A stretch of 37,519 nt of DNA from Bigelowiella natans CCMP2755 (GCA_000320545.1 ADNK01000695.1:1-37519), one strand, 5' to 3'. Positions 1 to 37,519 are shown, counted from the first letter of the stretch. The notes: a model not told the origin generated them from the letters alone. A program made the numbers and translations.

Positions 1-48
1 GAACAGGATGCTAACTCCCTACCCCAGGCTATTAGAAAATAGAGAGCA

Positions 49-4229: not shown

Positions 4230-4272
4230 AGGTCTAAGGGAATAAGGAAGGAAGGAAGGAGCAACGTGACTT

Positions 4273-4280
4273 GGGGGAGG
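4273..4280 (+). promoter_or_regulatory. Polypurine tract (plus-strand primer)
   Basis: GGGGGAGG directly abuts the TG LTR start. A second purine run, GGGAATAAGGAAGGAAGGAAGGA, lies at 4238-4260. Confidence 0.7.
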
Positions 4281-4801
4281 TGTAGCGCGTACCACTACGC
4301 GGGCACAAGTCACGTGCGACAACAAAGGGGTTGTCGCGGATATAGAATATAGATAACGTAGATATTAATACAGCATAGGCACGTGGGTTCCGGCGGGACT
4401 CATGGCAGCACACCGGAAGTGTGCTGCCCCACGTGCGGCGGCATTCGCGAAAGCTTCGCGAATGATTACGCAGTGCACGATTTAATAAAAATATAATCTT
4501 TAATAAAAATAAACACAACTCTTCAAAAGGAAGCAAACGTGCCTTTCCCCCCCCCTGCCTACTTGTGCACGTAGCGCCTCGGCCTGTGAACACCTTACGC
4601 GCAACATGTGCCAGACGGCAGTGGATCCAAAAACGACGCAGTGTTGTCTTCCATATATATCCACCACGTTTGACAAGGGGTTGCACGCCGACTACTGGAT
4701 GAGACTGGAGGCCTTCTGCCAGCAGAACGTCATTGAATCCCCAAGCATCCTCCGCATGTAGCTGTCTCCTACATTCATGAAAGTGCAGAGTGTCTGCTAC
4801 A
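4281..4801 (+). repeat. 3' LTR (~521 bp)
   Basis: Starts TGTAGC right after the PPT and ends at the inverted GCTACA (4796-4801). Contains AATAAA motifs (~4484, ~4502) and TATATAT (~4654). The 5' LTR is not in the window, so the right end is unconfirmed. Confidence 0.62.
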
Positions 4802-5212
4802 TCTTGGTGATGTACGTGCGCTGCCGCATTGTGTGACTGCAGCTAGGATGACCATTGCATGAAGCAACGCTGTCTTCGACATGTCTGTCAGAGGTCAGAG
4901 GGAATGGCTGGACGAACGGATGCAGCCTGATCGATTGGACTGCCAGCCAACTACAAGCACAAGCATGATGAAATGATGATGAATGTAGCTAGATAGCCAG
5001 AGCGAGCGATTACACATTGCATTTTTTTTGTCATCATTGCCATGAACTAAAGGTACATTTGTAACATGTGTGGTAACTGCATGTGTATTACAGTATCTAT
5101 TGAACAATGATAATAAATAAACTACATTTCCAAAATGTTACAAGACATTTGCAGTGAAGCTCATTTAATTCAGTGAAAAAAGCATCTCAAAAAGATAACA
5201 TAACACTAGCTG

Positions 5213-6157
5213 CTATGCAGCTTTTTCAAATTGCTTATGATCCAGAACATCCAATTTGCCGAATCCACCAGCCTCATAAAATTTCTTACATTCCTCAATT
5301 GCTTTGCGATCCTTCAGGAAGACACCGGGGAATCCCATTGTCTCACCGCCCCAGATTCCTGGCTCTTTTATGGGTTTTGAGTGACCTATTATAACGTGAA
5401 GATTCTCAATACTTTCTAGCGTAATGGATCCCTTTGTGTCCGAGAATCCAACACTGCTGAAATTTGAGACTGGAATCTTCTTTTTCTCTCCAACAACGGT
5501 TCCCTTTCCATCCACAACATAAAGCCATGTTGTACGGCCTGAATCTATTTCTACATTAAATTTCGATCCTTTCTCCATTTTACAGTCGAGCAAGGTAAAA
5601 TCAATCGGAAGCTTCTCGTTCTTCGGCGCACTTGTCTTTCTAAACGTTCCAGCTACAACTTTAACTCTCACACCTTTCTCTTCTTCACAGACAGGCAATA
5701 AATTGCTCTCTACTGTCATCATCCGTGGCTTCTTCGATTTTTCACTCTCGGGAATATTCACCAATATTTGAAGCCCGTGCACAGGCTTTTTTGCCTTCAA
5801 AGGATACTCTTCGTGCACCATTCCCTTATTCGAAAGTGTGTAATGAATATCACCAGGCCTTATTGTATTACCGCCTAGCTCCAAAGATGTCCTATTGGCT
5901 ATGCTACCCTCACTGTTGTCAAATATGTAAGACACTGCTGCGCACCCAGCATGTTTATGCGGAGGGAATATGGGTGTATCCATAATGTAGTGGTCGAGTT
6001 GAAGAATGGGATTCCTGAGTTCAAATGGTACATCAAGATGGGCAGCTTGGAATTCTTTGCCTCGGATGGTGACTGTTTTCATGGCCTTCCGACCTTCGTA
6101 AACTATTTTCTTCATCATTTCCAGTGAGTGCCTCTTTCTAACATGTAAACATGACAT
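5213..6157 (-). CDS. Pirin-family bicupin protein, intronless
   Basis: FPPHKHAG (His-x-His), SYIF, IRPGDIHY, KGMVHEE (His-x-Glu), HGLQILVNIP, VKVVAG and a C-terminal pirin-like PIKEP..WGG...VF.......Y..G.FG segment. The start could be a later Met. Confidence 0.92.
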   Translation of the reverse strand: MSCLHVRKRHSLEMMKKIVYEGRKAMKTVTIRGKEFQAAHLDVPFELRNPILQLDHYIMDTPIFPPHKHAGCAAVSYIFDNSEGSIANRTSLELGGNTIRPGDIHYTLSNKGMVHEEYPLKAKKPVHGLQILVNIPESEKSKKPRMMTVESNLLPVCEEEKGVRVKVVAGTFRKTSAPKNEKLPIDFTLLDCKMEKGSKFNVEIDSGRTTWLYVVDGKGTVVGEKKKIPVSNFSSVGFSDTKGSITLESIENLHVIIGHSKPIKEPGIWGGETMGFPGVFLKDRKAIEECKKFYEAGGFGKLDVLDHKQFEKAA

Positions 6158-6493
6158 GGGAGTGAATAAGAATGAGTATTTTTTATTTATTTGCTCTTTA
6201 AAGTTACAAACTCAGCATTTAAGAAAATAGTCAAAACAACATCAAGAGTTTTTCCTTCTAGATATTTGTAACTTTTAAAATGCTATGCAATCATACATAC
6301 ACGTATGCGCGTCTACACACACTCATACACCCCAACGGAAATAATGTGGTTTCTCTATCTCTGTCTGTCTGTAGCTGCCAGTATTTATCAATCTAATCGT
6401 CCCTCTTTTTTTCATTCACCTTTGGTACATGCCCTCCCCCCTCCAATCCCCCAAAAACCCACACCCACTCGCACACACGGGATCAATCAACCA

Positions 6494-6514
6494 CTAGATC
6501 TAGATCTAGATCTA
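6494..6514. repeat. (CTAGAT)3.5 self-complementary short tandem repeat
   Basis: ctagatctagatctagatcta. Confidence 0.85.
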
Positions 6515-6590
6515 CCTGAAAAGCCGCCAGAATCCCTCAGGAGCGGCGAGTTGCCATAGCGTCGCAAGTTAGCCTGTGGCACTGAGTGAG

Positions 6591-6770
6591 CCCACCAAAC
6601 CACGCACAAGTGATGATTTGATGGTGCGACAATGGTTTTACGTTACCGCTGGAGTAAAAACTAGACCAGTCAAACCTTGTCTCCCCACCAAACCACACAC
6701 AAGTGATGATTTGATGGTGCGACAATGATTTTACGTTACCGCTGGAGTAAAAACTAGACCAGTCAAACCT
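6591..6770. repeat. Tandem duplication of an 87-bp unit (6591-6677 and 6684-6770; period 93)
   Basis: cccaccaaaccac(g/a)cacaagtgatgatttgatggtgcgacaatg(g/a)ttttacgttaccgctggagtaaaaactagaccagtcaaacct occurs twice with 2 mismatches. Confidence 0.95.
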
Positions 6771-6825
6771 AATCCGCTACTGAGGTAACCAATGGAGCAG
6801 AGGAAGATGTCATCCCGGCCTCGTA

Positions 6826-7782
6826 CAAGGGGGATTCACTCCCCCTGGTTTTGGTCCGTGTCATGCTCGGAATCCAATCCAAACTTCTTCCGAAGCACCA
6901 CAGAAGACTTCTGGACGTGTGAGAAGGTCCAGAATTGTCCAGAAAGTGGTGCAAAAAAGTGGATTTTCAAGGAAAAAAATCGAGGGCAAAAACTTTGGGT
7001 GCCGCGGAAAGGGTCCACTTTGCGTGTTGGCTCAAAAAAACATGCTCAGAGGCCGTGTCAACAGCAACTCCATCACCTCCAGAAGTTCCACTTCAAAGTT
7101 CGCAAAATTGAACGTTTCCGCGCCAAAAAGGTGCTTTTTTTTTGTGGTTTTGACTTTGGTGAGTTTTCGATGTGTGGCTCCTAGCGGCCTGCACGGTGCC
7201 GATGCGGCAATCAATGAAGCTGGATGTGATGCGCGACGCGCAGCTCCAGAGCTGCTTGGGATTGGACGCACGAGCAAGACGTGTGGGCACGATGGCGCAC
7301 ACTGGCACACTTTGTGCGTGCCCAGCGCGCGCGCACGCAAGCACTCACAGCTTCCCACTCTGATGCACACTTGTCACTTGATCATCAAATTGAAGCTAGA
7401 CACGTCGCGACGTCGCGCACGACTGGATGATCGACGCTGCGCACGTGATCAGTCACACACGCTGGTGCACACATCGATGGGAAGGGCGGGAATGATGAAC
7501 AATGAACGATGAACAAAGCATTGATCAAATCTGCATGCGCCAGCAGGGAAGTGGGTTGGGCACATCTGAGACATCCCAGTGACTCGATGCCAAGAGTTCC
7601 GCCAATGTGCATCTTGGGCAATTTCACTGGACACTTTGTGGATGGTTTTTGAAGAAAACATTGAGGAATTTGAACAAAATTTGCATTTTTTTGGGTGAAA
7701 TCGAAAAATTTTCCCGGCTGACGCCGGGGCAAAACCGCCGAGCATGACACGGACCAAAACCTGGGGGAGTGAATCCCCCTTG
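6826..7782. mobile_element. Non-autonomous DNA transposon (MITE-like, 957 bp) with 45-bp TIRs and a 9-bp TSD
   Basis: TIR CAAGGGGGATTCACTCCCCCTGGTTTTGGTCCGTGTCATGCTCGG (6826-6870) matches its reverse complement at 7738-7782 with 1 mismatch. Flanks are GGCCTCGTA (6817-6825) and GGCCTCGTG (7783-7791). A 9-bp TSD is typical of Mutator-like elements. No transposase is visible. Confidence 0.9.
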
Positions 7783-9060
7783 GGCCTCGTGGACAAACGC
7801 GATGGGCAACTTCTGCTGCTGTCTCAACCATTGGCAAAAAAGGGACTTGGTTCTGAATGCGTTCCCGTGTGTGCAAGCAGGGGACACGAAAGTGGGGGAG
7901 GTCGCAAAAGTTGTTGGGCAAGAAAACAGTTTGCACCTTTCGATCCTGCTGACAATTGCGCGGCACGAACCAGCGAACACAATCACGATTGGGTGCATGA
8001 ACGACCGCACGCACTTCACGAGCGACAATTGCATGACCAGATTGCTGGGTTGCACAACTCCGTCAAATCCTGTGACGACTGGGATTTGCACAAACCATGC
8101 TTTGCGCGCGCGGCATGGCGAGCTCATCAATCGTTGCAATTGGACATTGAAGCACACTGGAGCCTGTTTGAAGTTCAAATTTGATTTTTTTTCGAATTTC
8201 AGCTTCAAAACCTCATTTTTGACGCCTGCCAGCGGGCGCAAATTGCAAAATGCTCAGCCACTTCTGAACCAGCTGGCGCAGCTGCACTTGCTGTACCACA
8301 AGTTTTGCAAGCTCATGGGGGTGTGCGCCCACTGGCTTTGTTCACATCATTGTGAAATGAATTTCAGCACACACACGAACGCAAAAAATGCTCTCAGTTG
8401 AGAGGTCATGCTGCTCGTTGCAGGTTTGACGGAGTTGTGTGTGAACGACACGTGCGTTTCGTCGATCGAAAAGAGTTTGACACACCTCTTGACCTGCTCA
8501 CTGCGTTGCGTGCTGCGCAATGAGCCACCCGTTTAGCCGTGCACGTGGCGAACGAGTGATCGTTTCAAAAGTGGTACAAAAAGGATGCCTGATTGGTGTG
8601 TACATCGGACAGACATCGACCTAGATGTTTGAGAAATGAGTGTTCAAGAAGTGATTCCAATGTTTGGGTCGTTGCGTTTCTCACTCACACAAGACAGCGT
8701 GCAAGCAATGAGCGTGTTGGCACCTGATCAATGTGCGCGTGGCATGGGTGCCTTCTTGACTACGGGCACTTTCATGCAAGGCAGCAGAGAAGCAATAATT
8801 GCATCGTTGAGCTGATGTGCACGTGACAATGCCTTGACAAAGCGCTGTTGTGATGATTGCATGCCACTGCAAGTTTTTGCCGGCCCACTGAAAAATCTCA
8901 CATCACTAGATCATCTGCCATATGCACAGCTTGGTGCTCTACTTGGTGTTTGTGGCGATGTGACAGTTGTGGTCGACTCTGGGGATTGCATTGCAACGGA
9001 CAAGATATGCACTGTGCAGAATGTGCACATGACGTGTGCTGTATGCAGCGTGTGAATGTT
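6826..9060. other. TpA-depleted block 1
   Basis: By-eye count: only 2 TA in 6826-8290, both in CTAG (~7181, ~7396). A few GTAC/TTAG/CTAG survive toward 9060. CpG remains abundant. Confidence 0.9.
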
Positions 9061-9062
9061 CC

Positions 9063-10491
9063 TTAAGATTTTGTTGCATCAACGTATTCAGCTCCATTGC
9101 GAATTTCCTTCTTGTGGATTCGCACATAAGGCTCCGATTCACCTTCAACATGATGGAAAATGGTGATACCAGTCAGCACAATCGGTATTGCACAACATTT
9201 GTGTATGTGGTTTGAGACTGTGGGTAAATGGTGAAATAAATATTCATGCCTGATGTACTAGCATATTAACTAATTTTCTATCCAAATTTATGCAGATGTA
9301 TAAAAGTTAGAATGCATGAAAATATGTAAATTTATATTATTATCATGTGGCTAGATTAGTAGTCACAATTTGTTCCTGGAACCTCTTATTTCAGCCTCCG
9401 AGGACACGCCTACAGAAAACATACACACACGCAGGCACACACACATATTGTTACTATCACTCAGAAACGTAATTTATTTATTTTATGTTCCCGAGTTAAC
9501 TGTGCAAAAGCATTGTGTTGACCAAATTTTGTATTCACCAGATTTCGTTATCACTACGGGAAAATACCATATTTATCTGCGGAAACGAAAGCATGAGCAT
9601 CTTTGTTTTTTCCATAGTAGGAAGCAGCAGCTCTGGGTAATGACGATGTCATATGCACTGGATTCTTGAGCTATAAAATAGTTAAACAATGACAACGCTG
9701 ATTATGTGGTGATGGTGTGATAGTATTAGATCTATTGGCTGAATGAAAATCAATTACGAAAATGATAATCTAACAACCGGAAGAGTCATAGTCGGTTTCG
9801 ACTCTGCAACATTTTCGCCCTTCCGAAAGATTTCGGGGTCAAGAGATGTATGAATTACAGGCCGATCTAACGTAGAACTCACGGTATTCATACGAGGTTT
9901 GGCCTACAATATCAAATAGTATGTCATATATTCTACCTAGGAAAATAAAATGCCAGAGATGTTAAAAATTTTCGTACACTATCATCAACTCATACAAATC
10001 TATGCGGTTTATGTGAAAAGCGCAAATGGAAGACTGTAGTATCTCAAACTTAGGTTTATATATAGGCAACAAAGCGAACTAACGGCATTTTTTCATCTAA
10101 CACCAACAATAGGTACCTCATTATAGAAACCCATCCAGTGGTCTCCCTTTTCAGCAACTTTATTCATGGACAAATCAGATACGAACTCTACGTTGCTGTT
10201 CTGCTAACAACATCAAATAATAACTGAGTTGGAAGCATTAACGATTAATCTCCACTAAGCACACGAACACACCCAAAGACATCATGCAACTTTTTAAGCA
10301 TGTAGTACCGCATTATTAGTGTCGCTTTGTTGCGCGTTGAGCTCTTCCCTTATTAATCCAGGCATCATACGATCTCTCAATGAAGATAATAGGTCCTCAG
10401 ATGATATCCGAACTGCAGAGGTATGTCTGTCTCCCCCCAGGAACAAGACAAAGAGCAGGCCTAAAACCCTCTGCAACCGCGCAGGTGACAT
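9063..10491 (-). CDS. Spliced gene of unknown function with N-terminal signal-peptide-like segment; boundaries approximate
   Basis: ATG at 10491 gives MSPARLQRVLGLLFVLFLGG... followed by short AG/GT-bounded open segments (NSNVEFVSDLSMNKVAEKGDHWMGFYNE; LKNPVHMTSSLPRAAASYYGKNKDAHAF; ...EPYVRIHKKEIRNGAEYVDATKS*). No recognisable domain. Confidence 0.45.
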
Positions 10492-10883
10492 GTTTGTAAC
10501 TCTGCAGCTCAGGATTAACTTGTGCAATGTTGTGCACTCGGTCGTCAACAACAACAATGATTAAAATTTTGAAATTTTCAAAAAAAAAATTGATGCAGAC
10601 ACTAAAATCTAAACTAGTAAAATCAGGAAATCACCGAATTTACTTTGACGCACATGCGAAAGGTATTGAATTTCATTAGATGTATTTAAATCTCGGATAG
10701 TAACATAACCTTGACAACGACAAAGATTTTGCCTGTTGTCGCTGGAATGAAATCCATGGAAATCTCAATGAATCCGTTCCTACCCTCAGCATTAGCAGAG
10801 ATTCAATTGGCGGCAAGCCGTTAGCGTTTAAATGAGCATTGATGACAATAGATCCATAAATTTGTCAAATGTACATGTCGCAG

Positions 10884-13037
10884 ATGAAAAATGTCCCTTA
10901 TTTAATAAACGATTCTAAACCCCATTGCTCGAATGGTGTGGGCCTTATGGAGAAGCCTGTCTCCTATTCTGATTTGACTATGAACGAATTAAATGATGAT
11001 TTGGAGCCCAAACGGAAGAGCATATGCTCTACAACCGAATGCCCAGCGTTACACAAAACCTTCGCTGTACATGAGGATGAACTTCCTCAAGATCCAGAAG
11101 TTGAAACTACAAAATCGAACAAAATCCTTCAGCAAGTGAAATTAGAGAGTTTAAGGAACAGAGTAAAGCATCTGATGGCAGATTTGAACCTGAAAGAGAA
11201 TGAAATTACCATAAGAGACACGAGGATTCTCAGTTTAACAAAGCTGGCTGAACAGCAGGAAAGGTGGAGCTGCACAACCAAGAAGACAGACTTGCTTGAG
11301 AGGCGTGCATAAAATTCAAATAATGACGATGTTGTCGTCCTAAACAGTAGATAGAGCACAGATATGTATTTACAAACGCTATTTTGTGTGTGTACAGCAT
11401 AAAGTCAAATATAATTCATGTATATGATAAGTTTTTGAGTTACTTTGGTGTTGCCCTTGCGCTCGTTTATTCTCAGCACACTACAAAAAGCCTACAAAGA
11501 AATAGAAAGACTCGATACACAACTCATAACGGAGCGCGTAATAACATGCAAAATTAATAATACTGATATCTTGATCAAAGTACCTCTTCTATTACCCGGA
11601 CAAATCCTGCACGCACGTAGTATCATCAACCCACAATTGTTCCAATCTATTTTTAAGATGATACAATTCGATGCCATCATCGACATTTTGATGCTAACAA
11701 TGCTTTATATTTCTACCTTTACTTATATTTACCCACCTATCTTCTAATATGGATACGTATGTTCTAGACAATTGCCATCATCGACATTTGATGCTGCTAC
11801 TTCTTTTGATGCACAGTAATCTTCTGTGTTTCAAAATCTTCTTATTTTGTTCACTGGTGTTTCCCAGAGCGAAGGGAAGGTTCGGTTGGAAAATTCAATG
11901 CTAAAGAGAAAGTCCCTATCAACACAAGCGAAATCGATGCAATTTTTCCTCAAATCCGAGCTCCAATCGTTGAATCCAAAAGAGTTTGAGTACTTCGTAG
12001 CTAGGTAGATATCCAACCACCACGGATGCTATTTGAGATTAAAAGATGATGACTAGATGGAAGAAACAAATGTGATGCCGAAACATTTAATCTCTTTTGA
12101 TCTTCGTACTCGTATATACTCCCCTCCCTTTATCTCATGACCTGTGTGTCTTACAATTCGATAAGATATTGTTGGTACCACTACCACATATGCATCTGTC
12201 TGTCATATAGACACACATAAACAATAATTCAAATGTTTGCTAACCCTAATGTTTGCTCCCAAAATAAAACCCACAAGTGAAGGGGGGAGAGGGAAAAGGG
12301 TCATATACGTGATATGTGTTCTTTTCTTATTTTCAATAATACCAATTGTCGTTGTAGTCATCATGGCCCTTTCGTGTTTTCATCTTCATCATTATCATCA
12401 TCATCATCATCATCATCATCATTGTCTTTTTCAAACAAAAACGATTAATCGTCTTATCGGCAGCCTATACGAGGCATGTGGATACAGTGCTCGAGTGAAC
12501 GGTGGAAAGAATGACGAGGGAGTCGACATATTTGTACACCATCCAGATAGAGGAACTGGTAGGTGGTGCCTATAAGTATACTCACGGACTTTTAAATCTT
12601 ATCACCATCCTCCTTCTTCTTCTTCTTCTTCTTCTTCTTCTTCTTTTCTTCATCGTCACCATTACTTCCATCGTTATCCTTTTGTCAGCATCATCATCAC
12701 CATCATCCTCATGCTTCTTCCTCTTCAATATACCCCCTGCAGGTGTAATCCAGTGTAAAGCATATAGCGTTGGCAATCGTGTAGTTCCAAAAGACCTTCA
12801 TGCGCTCAATGGCTCAAGGGATAAATTCCAGGCAAATTTTGCGGTTATATCTATATTCAGATATTTATATTTTGTTGATGTTGTAAAATCAGCCCAACAA
12901 TCAACAATCATCGCCATCAACGTTTTAACAGCAATCTTCATTTTGATAAAAAGGTTCTTGTCACAACTTCTGTGTGTACGAAAGCGGTAGGAGGATGTTT
13001 AATGATTCAATTTTAGATTGTTTAACTCTATTATTCA

Positions 13038-13070
<33 letters not shown>

Positions 13071-15209
13071 GCTTCTACTGTGTATAGTATCACATTTTTA
13101 AAATGGATGATGAAAATGATTTCATCATTTCATGCTAGCACTCGATCTTGTAATTCTCTGTAGTCTCTCCCCTTGAGAAATAATTGTACATTAGGGAAGA
13201 AAGTTTGTGGCAGAATTGAATGAGAACACTCGTCATTTCGAAAAAGAAGAAGAAGCCGCTGCTTCGTCGCCGTCTAAAGGAAGAACTACTCCTACCATGG
13301 TTGTGAGTATATTTATTTTCGTACTTAAAGTGGAGACTATGTTAGATTTGAATGCTAGTTGAGGGAATATCAGTCATCAAAAAGTGATGCCGAACAGAAA
13401 CAATACAGCATGTGCAAACAAACTCAACATAGACATGCAATGATAATACTACTATTTATGAATAGTAGGGAATAGAACACATCATAACAACAACAACAAC
13501 AACAACAACTTGACTACTAATTGAAACTTGTTGCTGACTGAATACTGATACCTCCCCCATGTGATCGATCGATACTACTACACTACTACCACTACTACTA
13601 TTCTTTGCAGAGAATGGAAATAATAAATGGATCCAAGCTAGATCTGATGATTGAGTTGTTCTGGGATAAGATCTTGCCTAGATGGGTCACCAACCGCTAT
13701 AAGTTACTGGCCACCTCCTCGTTGTCATCATCATCTTCTTCTTCCTCTTATTCATCACTATCATTGACACGATACACCAAAAATGGTCGCATGGCGTTGA
13801 CTTCGCAGCAGCATCACAGCGGGTCTTACAATCGAGGCCTCGTCACTGAAAGAAACAAGAGCGGCTTTGTCAAAAAAAGCAGTAATAATCATTCTGTCAT
13901 GCACGGCCTCTCAAAGACAACGACTTGTGATGAAAACTCAACAATTGTCTGTGATAGAATTAGAGATGTTGATAAAAAATTAGGCAGAGCATCCAGCTAC
14001 CACTTTCAAGCTAAGAAGCAGCAGCAGCAGATTATGATACAGAATTTTCAGAAAAGCGATGTCACCCATATTTCTAGCAACAGCAGTACAGACAAATGTA
14101 TGAGAGCCATAATCACCAGTAGTTGTAGTAGTAATAGTAGTGGTATTAGGAAGTCTACTTCTTCTCACTTTTCTTCCCCGATCAAACAGCATGATGAAAA
14201 GATCATCATCAACAATAGCTGCGAGTGTTATAGTAGTATCCAACCACCTGATGGTGCTGCCTCAGTACCGTCTACTGCTGCTACTACTACTACTACTACA
14301 ACTACGATATCTACTTCTCTTGATTCAACTTCCAAATCATCCTTCTCCCCCTCTTCGCATTCCACAAACAACAAGAAGGGGACTACTACTGCGCTTCTCA
14401 ATACGACGACTGAATTATCCTCTCAACCCATACATTCACCTGGAATAGATCATTCTAGAGCGGCACCTTTTTCACAGTCATCGTTGCCTTTATCGTCGTC
14501 ATTATCATCATTGTCATCATTGATACTATCACCAGCACCAGCACAAAGTAATGGCGGTACTACTGGTGGTAATGGTGACAATTATGAGCGCAGTGAACAA
14601 TTTGATCAGCATCCTACTGACACCAAACTGATGAAGCGTTGGCTCTCCTCTGGTACAATGTTACATGCAGCAAACGGAGGAGGAGTGTACGACAATCTAA
14701 ACAAAGAAAATGTCGAAAATATGCGTCACAAGAAAATTCGTAACAAGGCCAACAGGATCGATAGAATTATAGTTAATGAGAAGCAGAAGAAATCCATTGC
14801 TCCAACTCTTGCCACTGATTTCAAGCACATTCTGACTATTAACGATAAAGAGGACAACAACAGCTGCACCGTTGAAAAAGACGGTGATAATGATGACGAT
14901 GGTAAAGACAATTAATGAAAATACTAACCATAATTTATACTCATTATCATCGTGAAGGCTTTGTGTCGATTGATTATGAAATCGTCTTTTACATATTTCG
15001 AGGTGATATCAATTATCTACAGCATGTTAACAACTTTTATACTTTCTGATGTTTCATAGATATTATTATTCTACCGGGGAGGTCCAAGTTCTCTTCTTCT
15101 TCTTCCTCACTTTTACAGCTATCATCACCATTTTCAAAAGCAGCATTTGTAGCAGCAACACCAAGGTCTCTGAAGTATACCCCGGTAAGAAAAAATAAGG
15201 ACAATTATA

Positions 15210-15284
<75 letters not shown>

Positions 15285-15863
15285 AAGAGAGATAGAGGGG
15301 GGATGAGAAGTAGGATGGAATGGGAGGAACGACAGTTTCTTCAAAAAGTCACATGTGATATTCAAATGCAAAATTACTATTCTATGCACACGCACGCACG
15401 CACGCACGCACGCACGCACACAAACACTCTCCCGCAGTTTTTGACTTCATATTTACTCTCTCTCTCTCTGGCTTTGCAGTCAAAAAAACGACGGCAAGCA
15501 TGGTGTGAAGAGGACGTGAAAGTTCTCCTATCAGCAGTTGAAGCCCACAGAGGTGTTATGGATCACGGGAATGGAAAGGCTTCTTCTATCTAATACTATG
15601 TACTTTGTTTCTCAGGACATTCTAATGTTTGGACGAGAATCCTCGCATCTCACGGTGCAAAATTTCGACGTGCGGTGAATAATAGGGTATTGGCTGACAA
15701 ATGGAAAAGCTTAGTGAAGAAGGGCGTTGTTGAGCCGTTGTACACCGTTGCATATTACGAAAGGGCAAGAGAAAGAAAGAAGAAGCAGTGTGAAAAGCAA
15801 ATCAGCGATCAATCCAGTTCTCTGTTGCCATATTTCTGTGTTTCTGATGCCAGACTCCAATGA
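10884..15863 (+). CDS. Multi-exon protein: coiled coil + Mrr-type (type IV restriction) endonuclease domain + S/T-rich linker + telobox-like Myb domain (at least 883 aa)
   Basis: GT-AG exons 10884-11263, 11477-11537, 11868-12004, 12464-12558, 12743-12843, 12954-12986, 13195-13302, 13611-14901, 15060-15184, 15480-15552 and 15616-15863 join in phase (2652 nt) to TGA. Extra 5' exons are possible from ATG 10593. Confidence 0.82.
11960..13670 (+). other. Mrr_cat-like PD-(D/E)xK nuclease domain split over 6 exons
   Basis: Spliced: LQSLNPKEFEYFVASLYEACGYSARVNGGKNDEGVDIFVHHPDRGTGVIQCKAYSVGNRVVPKDLHALNGSRDKFQANFAVLVTTSVCTKAGRKFVAE...RMEIINGSKLDLMI. This matches Mrr hallmarks EFE, GY, DxGxD, QCK, VTTS and I.G..L. 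Confidence 0.85.
15480..15725 (+). other. Single Myb/SANT domain of TRF/telobox type
   Basis: Spliced: KKRRQAWCEEDVKVLLSAVEAHRGHSNVWTRILASHGAKFRRAVNNRVLADKWKSLVKKG. It has the three Myb Trp residues, and LADKWKSL resembles telobox LKDKWRNL. Confidence 0.78.
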
Positions 15864-15864
15864 T

Positions 15865-17600
15865 GACCAGCCATTGTGTGAAATGCGCATTCCATGTCGC
15901 CTGTTTGAAGTCATGCAATTCAGAAGTCTGTCCATGCACGCATGCACACAGTCTAACAGTGGCTCCAGGGCTGGCTGCTTGGATTTCACCGTTTGCAATG
16001 CTTTGTGTGAACGTGCCGACAAAATCCACACGTTGCATTCATTGAGCGTGTTGCTCGCTGAGCCCTCGCTCATCGCAGTCTGCATTGTGTGGCACGAGTT
16101 GCACATCGCATCATTGTTTGTTGCCGGTGACCACACTTGGTGAGTCAAATGCGCATCGCTAGATCGATGACATGCATTGCACGTGATTTTCATCGAAAAG
16201 CACACGCAAGCTGCACCATCTGATCCAGTGACAATCTAGCAATGCCAGAATGCTGGAATGGCATGCATGCCAGCAGCATGCCAGCATGAGCGCTTGAGCA
16301 CTGCGATGGTCGAGTGTGTGCAACGTCCCTCGATCGCTGCACTTTGTGCGCGGCCAGCTAGCCAGCTAGCCAGACATCAGAGCGCAAAGTCGTCGTTTTC
16401 CAGTTTTGCACGATGTCAACTGCATGCATCGCTGCGACACAAAAGATTCACGCAGCAGCAAAACGCGTGCAACGCAAAAAGTTCCAAGCTAGCGAGTCCA
16501 ATGATGGACACCACGTGACATGGAATCACTGTGTCAATTGTTGCACGAGTGCACAACCAAGCATTGAACGGAACGGACATGCAAGGAAGGAGGACATGCG
16601 AACTTTTCCACGCACGCGGGGGGCGCCAGCTGGCCAGTGCGTGCAACACAGTGCCAGAGTGCAGCCCAAAACAAGGGTTCAGGGATCATCTGCCATTCCA
16701 GCAATTCAGTTCAGCAGTGGGTCGTCAGTGGGCAAATTTTCACGTTGCGCATTTTCGCAATTTTTGCCACTGATTGCAGGTGGGAAGTGAAGTGTGGAGC
16801 ACGGCACGGGTGTCTGCTGCAGGTCACGACAGAGGCTCACAAAGAAGGATGATCTCCACCACTGCCTCTGCACACCCCGACAGCGTCCAAAGTGGGGGTG
16901 AATGGAAAAAAACAAACAGGTGAAGCAAACAGGTGAAGCCACTGAAGCTGCCAAAAAAAAACACACAAGGTCACCAACGACCCAACGATTGGTGAGGTGT
17001 CCTGCTGAAAAAGTTGCCACAGGTGCTGAGCCCTCACTGCCAATCAGCTGGAAGAGAGCCCCCGGCTGGTCGTGTGGTTCGAAGTGGGACTTGGTTCGTC
17101 ACGAAGAGGGGGGGAGCGCCGTGATGAACGAATGGACCAATGGTGGAGTCAAAAGGAGGACGAAACGTGAAGTTTGGGTGTGTCCAATGAAGAAATCAGA
17201 AGTCATGATTGCCTCATGAATTGTTGAAACAAATCGATTGCTGCAAAGCGACAAGCCAAAATTCGCAAAAATGATGTTTCACTTTCGGAGCTTTTGATGA
17301 ACATTCGAAAATGCTTGACTCACCTGACTTTGCGATTCTCAATTGGCATTCAAGCAATCAATGTGGAGTCTAGTCGCATTTTCCAAGTGATCGACAACGT
17401 AGCTTGCTTCAATGATCGGCTCCAAGGCACAAACTGCCTGCAAAAGTTGATTCCTCAGATGAAAACAAATTAGTGCTGAAATGAACCTGAAAATCAAGCC
17501 AGCTCACTGCCATGATGCAGAAAAACGATGATTGCGGTCTCTGCACCATGTTTGATGTTGATGCCCCTCAACACAACACTGTTGAGTTGCGTGACTTTTC
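15865..17600. other. TpA-depleted block 2
   Basis: By-eye count for 15960-17395: 6 TA, all in CTAG. Confidence 0.9.
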
Positions 17601-18589: not shown

Positions 18590-21427
18590 GTCTATATCTC
18601 TTTTGAAACAAAAACATTCAAGACCGCCACCTGGTACACAGTGGCGAAATAATGAAAATAAGAGCTCTGAAGATGTGGATTTGTTGAGCTCATCATTGCT
18701 ATCCTCAAATAAAATGACTCTTAACGTCAATAATATGAATAAACAATCCTTGTCGAGACCGTTGCGGCTCTCAGCAATGTTTTCCCCTGACAAAAACGAT
18801 ACCACCGTAGAGGGTGGGGTTGTTGAGCCTAAGCAAGAGGTGATTTCTTTTTTTTGTCTCCGAAAATTGCTTCTCACATGTGTGTTTTCAGCTATCTAGA
18901 AGCTGGATAGTTTCGAACGATGGAAATGTTCCATGGCCACATGGCATGAGGTTTGCTTGTACTGGTGGCAACTTTTATGGCTTTCGCGATTTTTTAGTCG
19001 CTCCAATTCAACCTGGTGAGCAGGTAATCTGAAATATGATTTGGAGCAGATCAGCAACGTTGCTGTGTTTTCTCGATCGTTAAGATTTAGTTTGGTTAAA
19101 CAGATTCGCTTGAACATCATGTTACATGCACCAGCATCCCCCGGATCGTATATTGCGCATTTTTGTTTCTTGCACGAAGGTAATATTAACATGGCAATTA
19201 AGACATGCAGTTACCCATCCTGTAAACTACAGGTGTACCTATTGGGCCATCGCAACGAGTTCGTTTCGTTGTGAAACAACAGAGATGGAATAATTCACGT
19301 GCACAGAATTCAGGGCAAAAGCTCCAGGTTGGAGCGCATTTCGTCAGGGATCTGACAATCATGGATGGACAAATGGTGACTCCAGGTCAAGAGGTGGAAA
19401 AAACCTGGCTTATAAAGAACACAGGAAAGATTCCATGGCCAAAAGGCACGCGACTCGTATGTATTGGAGGAAATTGGCCGGTAGGTGATGTCTCTGTCTT
19501 GGTAGAAGATGTTCTTCCATCGATGGAAACTCCCGTAAGTGTCACATTGAAGGCTCCGAATGAAATGGGGAGACAGAGTGCCAGATTCCAGCTTCAATTA
19601 GCAAATGGACGGAGATTTGGTCATCGGTACTGGGTTAACATCCAAGTGTCTCATTTTCCAAGCGCTGAGCAGCTATACGAAATGGGTCGACAATTTCTAC
19701 TCGATCATCAGCTTGTACAAAGCATTCAGGTCCATGAAGAAATGTGAATGTGATGAGTATTTCCTTTTTCTCTTTTAACGATTCCTCCAATAAATATTTG
19801 GTTACTCCTAATAGGGAGAGATCCCTTTCATCTTCGGTTCCTTTAGTCAAGGACGCCCATTACTGCGCACAGCCGAGGATCTAGTGAAGAAATGTCCTAA
19901 GTTAAAGTCCCATCCTTTTGTTTTGTTCATCTGGAGATTTCTCCCAACAATTGACCATTGGTTACGCTCTAAGTTGAAAGGTAATTCCAAGGACATAATG
20001 ACTTTCCTCCATAAAATACAGCTGTGACATTTTATCAGACGCGTTGGAAACTTACACAAAGATTGTACGAGAAAATAATGAAAATATAATTTCAAGCAGT
20101 AGTCCATCTGGCAGGTATAGAAAAACGATGCATGTAATTTCCATATTTTTGACGTAGATTGTGCAGTGTTACTGGTGGTGAAGAAGTTGCTTCAAAGATT
20201 TCTAACATCTCACAACCGGGGTTTTCACATGCTAAGTTTTCCAACCCTGAGTCAAGGTGATTTTTTCATTGTAATTCTGAATCACTGCTGAAAAAAACAT
20301 CATCAAAGGGAACATCGACGAGGAAATTCCATGCCATCCCTCCTTCGAAGGCCTACGCTCTCATTGGGAACCGCTAAGGAAGAAAAGAAAAGGCATATAT
20401 CGCAGAGGCCCTCAAGATTATCCACATCACTCGATTGGAGATCAAGATTTTCGCAGAGACCTTTATCTACCTTAGGTCCAATTAGAATATTTTGTATTCA
20501 TTCATTAGAGTTCAATAATACGTTGATTAGGTGATCGAAAAACAAGCAAATATATTAAGTTACGATTGGAGAATGATAGTGAGAAAATAATTTCACAATT
20601 TTCTGCACCACATACGATATCTCCGCATGTTGCTGGCATCAGTGAATCCCTTTCGACTACCAACCATAAAGGAGCATATGATCTTGAAAGGAAATTTCAT
20701 GATACTTCATTGAGTCGAACCATAAGAAGCCCCAGTCCAAAATTAGTCCGGGGAGGAGTAATAAAGCCAGATAGCAAATCTGGAAGTCCCCTTCGCCCAC
20801 CTCTTCGGAGCTCGCCGTCAACATCAGTTTCTCCTCAACGGCATACTGCTGTGCCAGCACCTCCATCAACTCCAGTCAGACCTATATTATCCAAGGTTCA
20901 GCAGTACATTAGCGTATTATCCTCCTACAGTGTTATTGAGTTCGTTTTTTTAATTTTCCAGGCTGTGGGAACTCCAACCTCACAACCACAAGCGTCATCA
21001 CCGCCACGCATAGACCCTGTGTTTGATTTTCGGCTCCATCAACATGTTCGCAGAGCTGCTTCACCAACTGATCAGATTGGGGGAGGTAGTTGCTTTTCTA
21101 TTCTTGGGTAAAGGTGTAGTAATATTGTCTCATTGTAGGTTCATTCCAACTTTGGGCAAAGCCTCTATGGGTAAAATTTCTGTCTGTTTACATATACTCG
21201 AAATCAGGCTGATGTATTCCAATCATAGCACGGAAGTCACTCTCGCCAGAGCTCATTGGTATCATGCTCATCAGGTAGATGTTGGTTAATTGGTGTAAGA
21301 TTATTCTTTTAAATGCTTGGTGTTTATTCTTCAACAGCACAAGGTGGCGATAAGAGTGACAAATCTGATCAATCAGATCCAGCATTTTAATCATATTGGG
21401 AATCAGTTTTTACAAGGATTTCGGTGA
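18590..21427 (+). CDS. NBR1/ILRUN-type FW (Ig-like) domain protein, multi-exon; ends approximate
   Basis: Exon 19233-19729: AHFVRDLTIMDGQMVTPGQEVEKTWLIKNTGKIPWPKGTRL...VSVTLKAP...RFQLQLANGRRFGHRYWVNIQV. In-phase neighbouring exons at 19104-19179 and 19815-19980; Pro/Ser-rich C-terminal exons. No clear PB1, ZZ or UBA domain seen. Confidence 0.78.
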
Positions 21428-36229: not shown

Positions 36230-37009
36230 ACAGCTGAGCAAATCATCAATTCGAAGTTTAGTGCTGCATCAAGAAGCTTCCTTGAACCAATCACTTCTTG
36301 CACAGGCACGGGGAGCATTGTGCTGTTCAAATGAAGGTGGCAACATGCCATCTTCCATGTCTCAATGTTGAAAAAACAACTTTGTGTTGCTTTGTCTTTG
36401 ACAATTGTCTTTGACAAAAGAGTGGAAGTCACACATTTTGCTGTGATGATTGCACAATGTTGCACATCATTGCCCTTGCTACAGATCTGCAGCTGTCTCA
36501 TCGCGGCGCACGATCTTTCATGCAACCAAAACTGACCGGATGTGAATTCTGCCGTGGCATGAGCGCACGCATCAGTGCACAACACAAAAGCAGCGTGCCA
36601 AACTGAAATCGAAACGGCAAAAAGGCAAAACAAAAACACAACAAGACTTCAGTGCTGTGATCGATCAAGTCAATCGCACGTGACCATTTGCAAATGGCAA
36701 ATGACACAAGTGCTTCCAAATTGGCAGCACCTCCGCCATGCAAGGTTTGCATCGCCGCAGAAATCAAAAGAATTCGGGTCAGGATTGTGTTCCAAACCAG
36801 GTCAGGTGATTCAAAATCACAATCCAAACAAGAGTCACTGTTGAAAAAAAATGGCAATGAAAAACTGAGGTTTTGCAGAAAAAAATGGATAAAGTGTCAC
36901 CAAGGGTCAGGGTCATCAGGGTCTGGATTCATTTTTGAGAGTCATCATCTAGATCAGGAGTCAGGAGAGTTGCAGGTTAGGGTTGCAGGTTGGGGTTGCA
37001 GTTTCAGGG
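36230..37009. other. TpA-depleted block 4: telomere-associated sequence with variant repeats
   Basis: 36265-36975 has 2 TA (CTAC, CTAG). TCAGGG at 36907, 36916 and 37004; TTGGGG at 36990. Confidence 0.85.
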
Positions 37010-37519
37010 TTAGGGTTAGGGTTAGGGTTAGGGTTAGGGTTAGGGTTAGGGTTAGGGTTAGGGTTAGGGTTAGGGTTAGGGTTAGGGTTAGGGTTAGGGT
37101 TAGGGTTAGGGTTAGGGTTAGGTTAGGTAGGTAGGTAGGTAGGTAGGTAGGTTAGGGTTAGGGTTAGGGTTAGGGTTAGGGTTAGGGTTAGGGTTAGGGT
37201 TAGGGTTAGGGTTAGGGTTAGGGTTAGGGTTAGGGTTAGGGATTAGGGTTAGGGTTAGGGTTAGGGTTAGGGTTAGGGTTAGGGTTAGGGTTAGGGTTAG
37301 GGTTAGGGTTAGGGTTAGGGTTAGGGTTAGGGTTAGGGTTAGGGTTAGGGTTAGGGTTAGGGTTAGGGTTAGGGTTAGGGTTAGGGTTAGGGTTAGGGTT
37401 AGGGTTAGGGTTAGGGTTAGGGTTAGGGTTAGGGTTAGGGTTAGGGTTAGGGTTAGGGTTAGGGTTAGGGTTAGGGTTAGGGTTAGGGTTAGGGTTAGGG
37501 TTAGGGTTAGGGTTAGGGT
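37010..37519 (+). repeat. Telomeric (TTAGGG)n array, chromosome end
   Basis: About 500 bp of TTAGGG running to the window end, G-rich strand pointing outward. Internal variants at 37118-37151, ~37242 and ~37470. Confidence 0.98.

What the first reader, a model, noticed from the sequence alone, without database searches (positions are those of the whole stretch)
10884..15863. Eukaryotic Mrr-type restriction nuclease fused to a telobox-like Myb domain, ~21 kb from the telomere
Seen: 11 GT-AG exons join in phase into an ORF of at least 883 aa that the ORF track shows only as fragments. It has a coiled coil, an Mrr_cat domain with the expected catalytic residues (EFE...GVD...IQCK), a long S/T-rich linker and a C-terminal single Myb domain ending LADKWKSL. 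Established: bacterial Mrr cleaves methylated (m6A/m5C) DNA, and TRF-type proteins bind double-stranded telomeric repeats through a C-terminal Myb with LKD(K/R)WR. Here the Lys is Ala and the last Arg is Lys, so specificity may differ. Inference: a domesticated, intron-bearing, DNA-targeted nuclease, possibly modification-dependent, acting on telomeres or repeats. I know of no characterised protein with this architecture.
Basis: partly seen in the sequence, partly recalled or inferred. Interest (0 to 1): 0.85.

Follow-up and report, generated by a model that had tools for sequence, protein, structure and literature searches.

The report
Alga's restriction-type nuclease fused to Myb
The marine alga Bigelowiella natans expresses one 11-exon gene joining a bacterial Mrr-type DNA-cutting domain, with all its catalytic residues, to a DNA-binding Myb domain like that of the human telomere protein TRF1; I found no description of this pairing, and its target and role are unknown.

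Summary
Eleven GT-AG exons (10869-15863, + strand) join in frame. Spliced RNA contigs from three studies show all ten junctions, including the three that link the nuclease half to the Myb half. RNA moves two donor sites (11537/11538 instead of 11579; 13299/13300 instead of 13302), which gives 887 aa.

- **Nuclease domain.** Exons 3-8 carry a complete Mrr-family PD-QxK domain. Exons 4 and 5 hit Pfam Mrr_cat one after the other along the profile. The family's signature residues are all there: E-F (motif I), D-x-G-x-D (motif II), Q-x-K (motif III).
- **Myb domain.** The C-terminal domain folds as a three-helix Myb, and its best solved matches are human TRF1. Only one of the three base-reading residues of helix 3 is kept unchanged.
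- **What is missing.** There is no Mrr_N-type methyl-sensing domain and no TRFH domain.
- **Copy number and relatives.** The gene is single-copy. No relative with this architecture turned up. The one public model found (247 aa) covers only the rear part.

Best reading: a nuclear endonuclease held on DNA by its Myb. Action at telomeres and dependence on DNA methylation are not supported, but they are not excluded either. It is a new domain combination of known parts. The joined protein was not searched or folded.

The parts
10869..11263 (+). Exon 1 (aa 1-131). Holds the putative start codon and an N-terminal region with no family match. A helical, heptad-like stretch lies at about aa 87-125. 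There is no signal-peptide-like hydrophobic run.
   Evidence: The open frame starts at 10860. The RNA contig begins at 10939 and the joint to exon 2 is seen. Pfam gives no significant hit. The heptad test is weak.
11477..11537 (+). Exon 2 (aa 132-152).
   Evidence: Joint 11537 to 11868, GT..AG, in X1, X5 and X8. The frame is kept.
11868..12004 (+). Exon 3 (aa 153-197). Start of the Mrr nuclease domain, with motif I (E-F-E at 11982-11990).
   Evidence: It aligns to positions 5-20 of my profile of 70 prokaryotic Mrr_cat proteins. Its open stretch ranks 4th of 1896 in the window.
12464..12558 (+). Exon 4 (aa 198-229). Mrr motif II, D-E-G-V-D at 12513-12527.
   Evidence: Pfam Mrr_cat 15.3 bits, profile positions 16-44. 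The open stretch scores 20.2 bits in the genome search. It ranks 1st of 1896 stretches. The nearest ESM Atlas clusters are all Mrr_cat.
12743..12843 (+). Exon 5 (aa 230-263). Mrr motif III, Q-C-K at 12751-12759.
   Evidence: Pfam Mrr_cat 15.1 bits, profile positions 51-79. It ranks 2nd of 1896 stretches.
12954..12986 (+). Exon 6 (aa 264-274). The core strand 'LVTTS' of the nuclease domain.
   Evidence: It aligns to profile positions 87-95, in order with the other exons but with a score near zero. Both of its joints are seen in RNA.
13195..13299 (+). Exon 7 (aa 275-309). A charged insertion inside the nuclease domain. RNA places its donor at 13299/13300, not at 13302.
   Evidence: Joint 13299 to 13611 in X1, X5 and X8.
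13611..14901 (+). Exon 8 (aa 310-739). Its first 15 or so residues close the nuclease domain. The rest is a linker of about 390 aa, 28% Ser+Thr, with no family match.
   Evidence: The start aligns to profile positions 106-119. Composition. RNA covers 13610-14266 and 14314-14900.
15060..15184 (+). Exon 9 (aa 740-781). End of the linker.
   Evidence: Joints 14901/15060 and 15184/15480 are seen in X1, X5 and X8.
15480..15552 (+). Exon 10 (aa 782-805). A basic KKRR stretch and helix 1 of the Myb domain.
   Evidence: AF2 model of P0001: helix at residues 151-163, pLDDT 85-93. The joints are seen in RNA.
15616..15863 (+). Exon 11 (aa 806-887 plus the stop). Myb helices 2 and 3, with the recognition helix L-A-D-K-W-K at 15690-15707, a possible fourth helix, and the tail.
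   Evidence: TRF1 is the best match by sequence and by fold. The RNA contig runs on to 15967.
36990..37519 (+). The TTAGGG telomere array at the end of the window. This is context only, not part of the gene.
   Evidence: Read directly from the sequence.

Best explanation
One single-copy, expressed nuclear gene of Bigelowiella natans encodes a protein of about 887 aa with four parts:
- an N-terminal region of about 180 aa, perhaps a dimerising helix;
- a complete Mrr-family PD-QxK endonuclease domain (about aa 183-325);
- a low-complexity Ser/Thr-rich linker of about 450 aa;
- a C-terminal single three-helix Myb domain of the TRF/telobox class (about aa 783-845).

The most likely mechanism is a tethered nuclease. 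The Myb domain and the basic stretch before it hold the protein on double-stranded DNA or chromatin in the nucleus, and the flexible linker lets the nuclease domain cut nearby.

What is shown: the gene structure, its expression, the two domains and the intact catalytic motifs. What is inferred: that the nuclease is active, that the Myb binds DNA, and that the protein sits in the nucleus. What remains unknown: the DNA sequence it recognises and its biological role (repair, recombination, genome defence or telomere processing).

My confidence is about 0.9 for the architecture and about 0.5 for the tethered-active-nuclease mechanism. The confidence value given for this explanation is for the mechanism.
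For: **Gene model.**
- All ten joints appear in spliced contigs from three studies. One contig runs from exon 1 to 14266 and a second from 14314 to 15967, at similar depth, 35 and 45.
- The joined frame is open.

**Mrr domain.**
- Two neighbouring exons each hit Pfam Mrr_cat (E 0.02 each) at successive profile positions, 16-44 and 51-79.
- This is the only Mrr_cat candidate found in the 91-Mb genome.
- A separate profile built from 70 prokaryotic Mrr_cat proteins places exons 3, 4, 5, 6 and the start of 8 in the same order as the domain. The exon 4 and 5 stretches rank 1st and 2nd of 1896 open stretches in the window.
- Motif I (E+F), motif II (D-x-G-x-D) and motif III (Q-x-K) match the family signature. 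In LlaGI the two Asp and the Lys are essential for cleavage (PMC2790908).

**Myb domain.**
- The only four PDB sequence hits are human TRF1 Myb.
- Proteins with several Myb repeats match at E 2e-12.
- The AF2 model has pLDDT 85-93 over three helices.
- Foldseek ranks 1-6 are all TRF1. VIA-align gives TRF1 Z 7.9.

**Other.**
- The gene is single-copy. Elsewhere in the genome only short simple repeats match it.
- The first 35 residues hold no hydrophobic signal-like run.
Against: - The joined protein was never scored or folded as a whole. No single exon reaches the Pfam cut-off of 21 bits; the best is 20.2.
- Pfam's own Myb models do not hit the C-terminal part.
- Two of the three TRF base-contact residues in helix 3 are changed. 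A TRF-like Myb, that of TERB1, is known to have lost DNA binding (PMC8867601).
- No relative with this architecture was found, so conservation cannot argue for function.
- No long read spans the 47-base repeat gap in exon 8.
- The 5' end and the start codon are not mapped.
Confidence: 0.5

Rival explanations
1. It is a telomere-directed nuclease. The Myb reads TTAGGG repeats, terminal or interstitial, and the Mrr domain cuts there. That would make it a natural counterpart of the engineered TRF1-FokI fusion, used for telomere trimming or subtelomeric recombination.
For: The best sequence and fold matches of the Myb are TRF1, Tbf1 and TRF2. The organism's telomere repeat is TTAGGG. A possible fourth helix follows the Myb, as in plant telomere-binding Mybs (PMC3598436).
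Against: Helix 3 reads L-A-D-K-W-K where the telobox has L-K-D-(K/R)-W-R, so only the Asp of the three critical residues is unchanged. Canonical telobox exons exist elsewhere in the genome. There is no TRFH domain. An unregulated telomere cutter would be harmful to the cell. The position near a telomere is not evidence about the protein's target.
Confidence: 0.15
2. It is a modification-dependent (type IV-like) nuclease that cuts methylated or otherwise modified DNA, as bacterial Mrr does. It would be used against foreign DNA or against marked parts of the alga's own genome.
For: The catalytic domain belongs to the Mrr family, with its signature D-x-G-x-D and Q-x-K.
Against: In bacterial fusions of the Mrr catalytic domain, modification is sensed by separate winged-helix or RAMA domains (PMC11037411). 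No such domain was detected in exons 1-2 or in the linker. Myb domains are not known to me as readers of methylated bases; that statement rests on my own knowledge.
Confidence: 0.1
3. It is a chromatin-bound protein in which one domain has changed its job. Either the Myb acts as a SANT-like protein- or histone-binding module, or the nuclease domain only binds DNA and no longer cuts it.
For: Helix 3 is divergent and Pfam's Myb models give no hit. TERB1 is a precedent for a TRF-like Myb that lost DNA binding. Many SANT domains score close behind TRF1 in the fold search.
Against: All catalytic signature residues of the nuclease are intact. A basic arm (KKRR) precedes the Myb in the position where the TRF1 alignment starts. 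The helix-3 Asp, Trp and basic residues are kept.
Confidence: 0.15
4. They are two separate genes, as in the public annotation, with an independent Myb-only product of about 247 aa. On this view the contigs mislead across the repeat gap.
For: The public model P0001 starts at an internal Met (14630) and covers only the rear part. No contig bridges 14267-14313.
Against: Exon 8 is one open frame of 430 codons, covered on both sides of the 47-base repeat at similar depth. The stop at 14915 is spliced out in three runs. The extra small exon of P0001 is not seen in any RNA contig.
Confidence: 0.04
5. It is a remnant of, or a domesticated gene from, a mobile element. Some retrotransposon proteins, such as that of R2, combine a Myb with a restriction-like PD-(D/E)XK endonuclease; that comparison rests on my own knowledge.
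For: It combines a Myb with a restriction-fold nuclease. A Ty3/Gypsy element lies 7 kb upstream.
Against: The gene is single-copy and has ten introns. No reverse transcriptase or transposase domain was found in any exon. The motifs are those of Mrr (Q-x-K, D-x-G-x-D) and do not match the R2-type endonuclease.
Confidence: 0.05

Closest known systems
Escherichia coli Mrr (type IV restriction endonuclease) and Pfam Mrr_cat PF04471
   Same: The catalytic domain has motif I (Glu followed by Phe), motif II (D-x-G-x-D) and motif III (Q-x-K) in the same order.
   Different: This one is eukaryotic and its domain is split by five introns. It has no detectable N-terminal modification-sensing domain. It carries a long disordered linker and a C-terminal Myb. 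A charged insertion (exon 7) sits inside the domain.
Bacterial fusions that reuse the Mrr catalytic domain (LlaGI; winged-helix- or RAMA-Mrr-NTPase enzymes)
   Same: The PD-QxK domain serves as a portable cleavage module attached to a separate targeting or sensing domain (PMC2790908; PMC11037411).
   Different: Here the partner is a eukaryotic Myb domain. No NTPase or translocase module was found.
TRF1, TRF2, Tbf1 and plant TRF-like telobox proteins
   Same: A single C-terminal three-helix Myb preceded by a basic arm. These proteins give the best sequence and structure matches: 30-35% identity and rmsd 1.6-2.7 A to TRF1.
   Different: It has no TRFH dimerisation domain. Helix 3 reads L-A-D-K-W-K instead of L-K-D-(K/R)-W-R. 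It carries a nuclease, which no known telobox protein does.
Engineered TRF1-FokI fusion
   Same: It follows the same design idea: a restriction-enzyme cleavage domain joined to a TRF-type DNA-binding protein. The engineered version is widely used to break telomeres (62 papers hold the term).
   Different: TRF1-FokI is man-made and uses whole TRF1 with the FokI domain. This protein is natural, uses an Mrr domain, and its Myb has unproven specificity.
Yeast Rrg7 / DUF2034 (PF10356), the eukaryotic branch of the Mrr-like group
   Same: It is a eukaryotic protein with an Mrr-like PD-(D/E)XK domain. The Mrr_cat/DUF2034 group is recorded in Eukaryota (PMC3424549). Exon 4 gives a faint RRG7 hit, E 0.22.
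   Different: Rrg7 is a mitochondrial protein without a Myb; that rests on my own knowledge. Here the match to Mrr_cat is clearly better than the match to RRG7.

Membership tests
Mrr_cat (PF04471) nuclease domain | A match to the family profile above the curated cut-off of 21 bits | tested here: inconclusive
   The test could only be run exon by exon. Exon 4 scores 15.3 bits, exon 5 scores 15.1 bits, and the open stretch around exon 4 scores 20.2 bits. The two exon hits lie one after the other on the profile and add up to about 30 bits. The joined protein was not scored.
Mrr_cat (PF04471) nuclease domain | Motif II: two Asp four residues apart, linked by a Gly (D-x-G-x-D). This is specific to the Mrr family and essential in LlaGI. 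| tested here: met
   D-E-G-V-D at 12513-12527 aligns to the profile's DgGvD. The definition comes from PMC2790908.
Mrr_cat (PF04471) nuclease domain | Motif III: Q-x-K, with Gln in place of the usual acidic residue | tested here: met
   Q-C-K at 12751-12759 aligns to the profile's QcK.
Mrr_cat (PF04471) nuclease domain | Motif I: a Glu followed by a conserved Phe in the first helix | tested here: met
   E-F-E at 11982-11990 aligns to the profile's efE. The alignment score of this exon is low, 3.4 bits.
Type IV modification-dependent restriction enzyme (Mrr proper) | A separate domain that senses the modified base (a winged helix such as Mrr_N, or SRA, RAMA or similar) | tested here: not met
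   Exons 1, 2, 8 and 9 give no Pfam hit to any such domain at E up to 10.
Type IV modification-dependent restriction enzyme (Mrr proper) | Cleavage that depends on DNA methylation | not testable with these tools
   This needs a biochemical assay.
Myb/SANT domain | A three-helix bundle with spaced aromatic residues, and homology to known Myb repeats | tested here: met
   Proteins whose repeats score 67-76 bits against Pfam Myb_DNA-binding match at phmmer E 2e-12. AF2 gives pLDDT 85-93 over three helices. Fold matches are Myb/SANT throughout. Pfam's own models give no direct hit.
Telobox / TRF-type telomeric Myb | The helix-3 signature L-K-D-(K/R)-W-R, whose Lys, Asp and last Arg read the TTAGGG major groove | tested here: not met
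   The sequence is L-A-D-K-W-K. The Asp is kept, the Lys is Ala, and the last Arg is Lys (alignment; residue roles from PMC8867601).
Telobox / TRF-type telomeric Myb | A dimerisation domain (TRFH or equivalent) that goes with the single Myb | tested here: inconclusive
   No exon hits the TRF (PF08558) model. An N-terminal heptad-like helix is possible, but my test did not separate it from shuffles.
Telobox / TRF-type telomeric Myb | Specific binding to double-stranded telomeric repeats | not testable with these tools
   This needs EMSA or SELEX.

The most novel reading that the evidence does not exclude
This is a natural 'TRF1-FokI'. The cell itself makes a restriction-type nuclease aimed by a telomere-class Myb at TTAGGG-like repeats, or at a variant of them. 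It would make programmed breaks at chromosome ends or interstitial repeats, for telomere trimming, subtelomeric recombination or the healing of chromosome ends. That would be the first nuclease joined directly to a telomere-repeat reader, where known telomere nucleases are recruited through protein partners.
Probability: 0.12. Interest if true: 0.85.

Novelty: new variant of a known kind. Interest (0 to 1): 0.55.

Why it matters
Both domains are well known, but I found no description of this pairing: an Mrr-type restriction nuclease with intact catalytic residues covalently joined to a TRF-class Myb. I looked in the literature and in a library of 1.84 billion protein representatives.

Known telomere-associated nucleases (Apollo, SLX1-SLX4; from my own knowledge) are recruited through protein contacts. 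Researchers had to engineer TRF1-FokI to get a Myb-aimed cutter. A natural version would show how a cell tolerates and controls such an enzyme. It could also provide a compact, programmable cutting module.

The finding also corrects the public annotation of this genome. The one public model found covers only the rear 247 aa, includes an exon that RNA does not support, and so hides the fusion.

The case is limited by the lack of any ortholog and of any functional data.

Tried and rejected
The joined (spliced) protein was not sent to any search, family scan or structure prediction. Exons were searched one by one by reference. The only spliced sequence used was the public model P0001, which a tool returned. 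As a result the nuclease domain was never folded.

**Searches that led nowhere.**
- PDB sequence search with exon 4 and with exon 5: nothing relevant.
- The search for homologous proteins with the exon 4 stretch: no candidate shared enough words. With exon 1: nothing. With exon 8: only P0001.
- The look-up of encoding contigs for P0001: nothing on record.
- tblastn of exons 4 and 5 against plasmids: only weak hits (E 0.2-9), though three lay under genes annotated as restriction endonuclease. I used these to seed my own profile.
- Metagenome scan with exon 11: one hit, L088. I reject it as chance. It comes from an exact 8-residue pattern and lies antisense to an 846-aa open frame.
- RRG7 family search in the own genome: no hit, but the controls did not hit either, so it says nothing.

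**Models and tests that failed.**
- Single-sequence AF2 of P0001 was poor (pLDDT 41) and its Foldseek hits were meaningless. It was replaced by the alignment-based model.
- My heptad test for the coiled coil was not significant.

**Readings considered and rejected.**
- Two separate genes: the RNA joints argue against it.
- A mobile element: the gene is single-copy with ten introns.
- Targeting to an organelle or the nucleomorph: there is no signal-like N-terminus, though the 5' end is not mapped.


Full report
**Where and what.** Earlier notes of this scan name the organism as the chlorarachniophyte alga Bigelowiella natans. The one public protein that matched confirms this, because its source label is jgi/Bigna1. 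The window ends in about 530 bases of TTAGGG repeats, so the gene at 10869-15863 lies about 21 kb from a chromosome end. Around it are a Ty3/Gypsy element (49-4229), a pirin gene on the minus strand (5213-6157) and an NBR1-like exon (19271-19747). This is ordinary subtelomeric gene space.

**Gene model.** I laid contigs of three older runs from three studies, plus raw reads of one 2026 RNA run, on 10400-16300. The contigs carry ten GT..AG skips, so they come from spliced RNA.
- Two donors differ. Both keep the frame.
- The RNA-supported coding sequence is 2664 bases, 887 aa, with the only stop at the end.

That fails: in all three runs one contig runs from exon 8 through 14901/15060, 15184/15480 and 15552/15616 to past the stop codon.
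- In X1, one contig covers 10939-14266 (exons 1-8, spliced) and a second covers 14314-15967, at depths of 35 and 45.
- The gap of 47 bases is an ACT repeat inside the open exon 8, a place where assemblers break.
- One transcript is therefore very likely, but it has not been seen as one molecule.
- The raw-read run gave only 20 reads and adds nothing on the joints.
- The 5' end is not mapped. No depth lies between 10597 and 10793, so the upstream gene is separate.

**Public annotation.** The only database protein that matches exon 8 is P0001 (Bigna1 130956, 247 aa). It starts at an internal Met (14630) and includes a small exon that no RNA contig supports. After that it follows exons 9-11. No public model of the front half was found within the length ranges I could reach. 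As far as I could see, the fusion is hidden in the public gene set.

- Exon 4 hits Pfam Mrr_cat at 15.3 bits (profile positions 16-44) and exon 5 at 15.1 bits (positions 51-79), each at E about 0.02 against 24,736 families. It is very unlikely that two adjacent exons would by chance hit the same family at successive positions.
- A six-frame search of the whole 91-Mb genome finds this locus as the only Mrr_cat candidate, at 20.2 bits.
- As a separate check I collected 70 prokaryotic Mrr_cat proteins, confirmed three by Pfam (77-113 bits), and built a profile from them.
- That profile places exon 3 at positions 5-20, exon 4 at 23-48, exon 5 at 54-76, exon 6 at 87-95 and the start of exon 8 at 106-119, in the same order as the domain.
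- Among all 1896 open stretches of the window in six frames, those holding exons 4, 5 and 3 rank 1st, 2nd and 4th.
- The nearest ESM Atlas clusters to the exon 4 stretch are all Mrr_cat.

**Catalytic residues.** The family's signature residues are defined by Smith et al. 2009 (PMC2790908), and all are present:
- motif I, a Glu with an adjacent Phe (E-F-E);
- motif II, two Asp four residues apart joined by a Gly (D-E-G-V-D);
- motif III, Q-x-K with Gln in place of the usual acidic residue (Q-C-K).

In LlaGI the two Asp and the Lys are essential for cleavage. Exon 7 adds a charged insertion before the last strand-helix unit. I conclude that the domain is a complete Mrr-type nuclease domain that looks catalytically competent.

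**The Myb domain.** Pfam's Myb models do not hit P0001, so I tested the domain in other ways.
- phmmer against PDB sequences returns four hits out of 177,635. All are the human TRF1 Myb domain and cover the whole domain (E 0.05).
- An exhaustive phmmer search of 1.84 billion representatives returns only five proteins besides P0001. Three are multi-Myb proteins whose repeats score 67-76 bits against Pfam Myb_DNA-binding and carry the LKDKWR telobox helix. The best has E 2e-12 and 36% identity over 59 aa.
- With these three as an alignment, AF2 models residues 145-205 of P0001 at pLDDT 85-93 as three helices, with a less confident fourth helix.
- Foldseek ranks 1-6 are all TRF1 (probability 1.00, rmsd 2.0-2.6 A, 28-33% identity), followed by Tbf1 and TRF2.
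- VIA-align against 48,161 chains puts TRF1 first (Z 7.9 and 7.5) and S. pombe Tbf1 at 7.3. Other Myb/SANT folds lie within one Z unit.
- The ESM Atlas agrees.

The domain is therefore a Myb of the TRF class by overall likeness.

**The recognition helix differs.** Where TRF1 has L-K-D-R-W-R, this protein has L-A-D-K-W-K. The Lys, Asp and last Arg are the residues critical for reading the telomeric major groove. One change at that Arg abolishes TRF1 binding, and the TRF-like Myb of TERB1 has lost DNA binding altogether (PMC8867601). The genome also holds at least two Myb exons with the canonical VDLKDKWRN helix on other contigs. Exon 11 has no paralogue. Telomere specificity is therefore an open question, not a finding.

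**What is absent.**
- No winged-helix, SRA, RAMA or other modification-sensing domain was found, and no TRFH domain, NTPase, reverse transcriptase or transposase. The Mrr catalytic domain is a portable module, and in bacterial fusions the modified base is sensed by a separate domain (PMC11037411). Methyl-dependence therefore does not follow from the family name.
- The N-terminal stretch has a heptad-like pattern (about aa 87-125), but 64 of 500 shuffles did as well.
- The first 35 residues have no signal-like hydrophobic run.

**Copies and relatives.** The gene is single-copy. Every other DNA match in the genome is a short simple repeat from its introns or linker. I found no relative with this architecture in the representative library, by word search, or in JGI metagenomes, where the single hit was a chance pattern match antisense to a long open frame. 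Eukaryotic members of the Mrr_cat/DUF2034 group are on record (PMC3424549), so a eukaryotic Mrr-like domain is not new in itself.

**Interpretation.** The best-supported reading is a nuclear, DNA-tethered endonuclease. The Myb and its basic arm anchor the protein, a flexible linker of about 450 residues gives it reach, and the Mrr domain cuts. The architecture is well supported. Nuclease activity, DNA binding and nuclear location are inferred. The role is unknown.

The engineered TRF1-FokI shows that such a design does cut telomeres, and that is also why an unregulated natural one would be dangerous to the cell. The methyl-dependent reading has no support beyond the family name.

**Verdict.** This is a new combination of known domains, seen in one species so far and expressed, and it is worth a bench test.

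Noticed in passing
window 14630-15863 (public model P0001, Bigna1 130956): The public gene model covers only the last 247 aa. It starts at an internal Met and includes a small exon of about 45 bases (near 14957-15001) that none of the RNA contigs shows. No public model of the front half was found within the length ranges I could search.
   Followed up: partly
G000:C1167:22917-23111 (-) and G000:C2333:24310-24468 (-) (loci L086, L087): Two other Myb exons in the same genome carry the canonical telobox helix VDLKDKWRN. They are better candidates for the alga's ordinary telomere-repeat-binding proteins.
   Followed up: partly
window 37121-37152 and about 37240: The TTAGGG array holds a short irregular tract (TTAGG, then several TAGG units) and a single GGATTAGGG variant. 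These are either sequence variants within the telomere or assembly noise.
   Followed up: no
window 12374-12434, 12597-12661, 13027-13082, 15205-15295, 15380-15420: Most introns of this gene hold long microsatellites: CAT, CTT and TAC repeats, AT followed by AG, and ACGC. The same repeat types sit clustered together at many other loci of the genome (for example C2309, C1073, C573). The reads tool also reported that reads seem cut at these places.
   Followed up: no
window 49-4229: A Ty3/Gypsy-type retrotransposon with two long open frames. They hit the gag-aspartyl protease, reverse transcriptase, RNase H and integrase zinc-binding domains.
   Followed up: partly
window 5213-6157 (-) and 19271-19747 (+): A pirin-family gene (both cupin halves) and an exon with an NBR1-type Ig-like domain (89 bits). 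These are ordinary genes close to the chromosome end.
   Followed up: no
P0002, P0003 (pea, KAI5403355.1 and KAI5403356.1): Two adjacent hypothetical pea proteins of 1793 and 1247 aa hold 8-10 repeats of a stretch of about 42 residues resembling the second half of this Myb domain. Pfam does not call any Myb in them.
   Followed up: no
window 11531-11798 and 12021-12368: Run X1 also holds low-depth contigs (about 9, against 35 for the spliced form) that lie wholly inside introns 2 and 3. They could be unspliced precursor RNA or traces of genomic DNA in the library.
   Followed up: no
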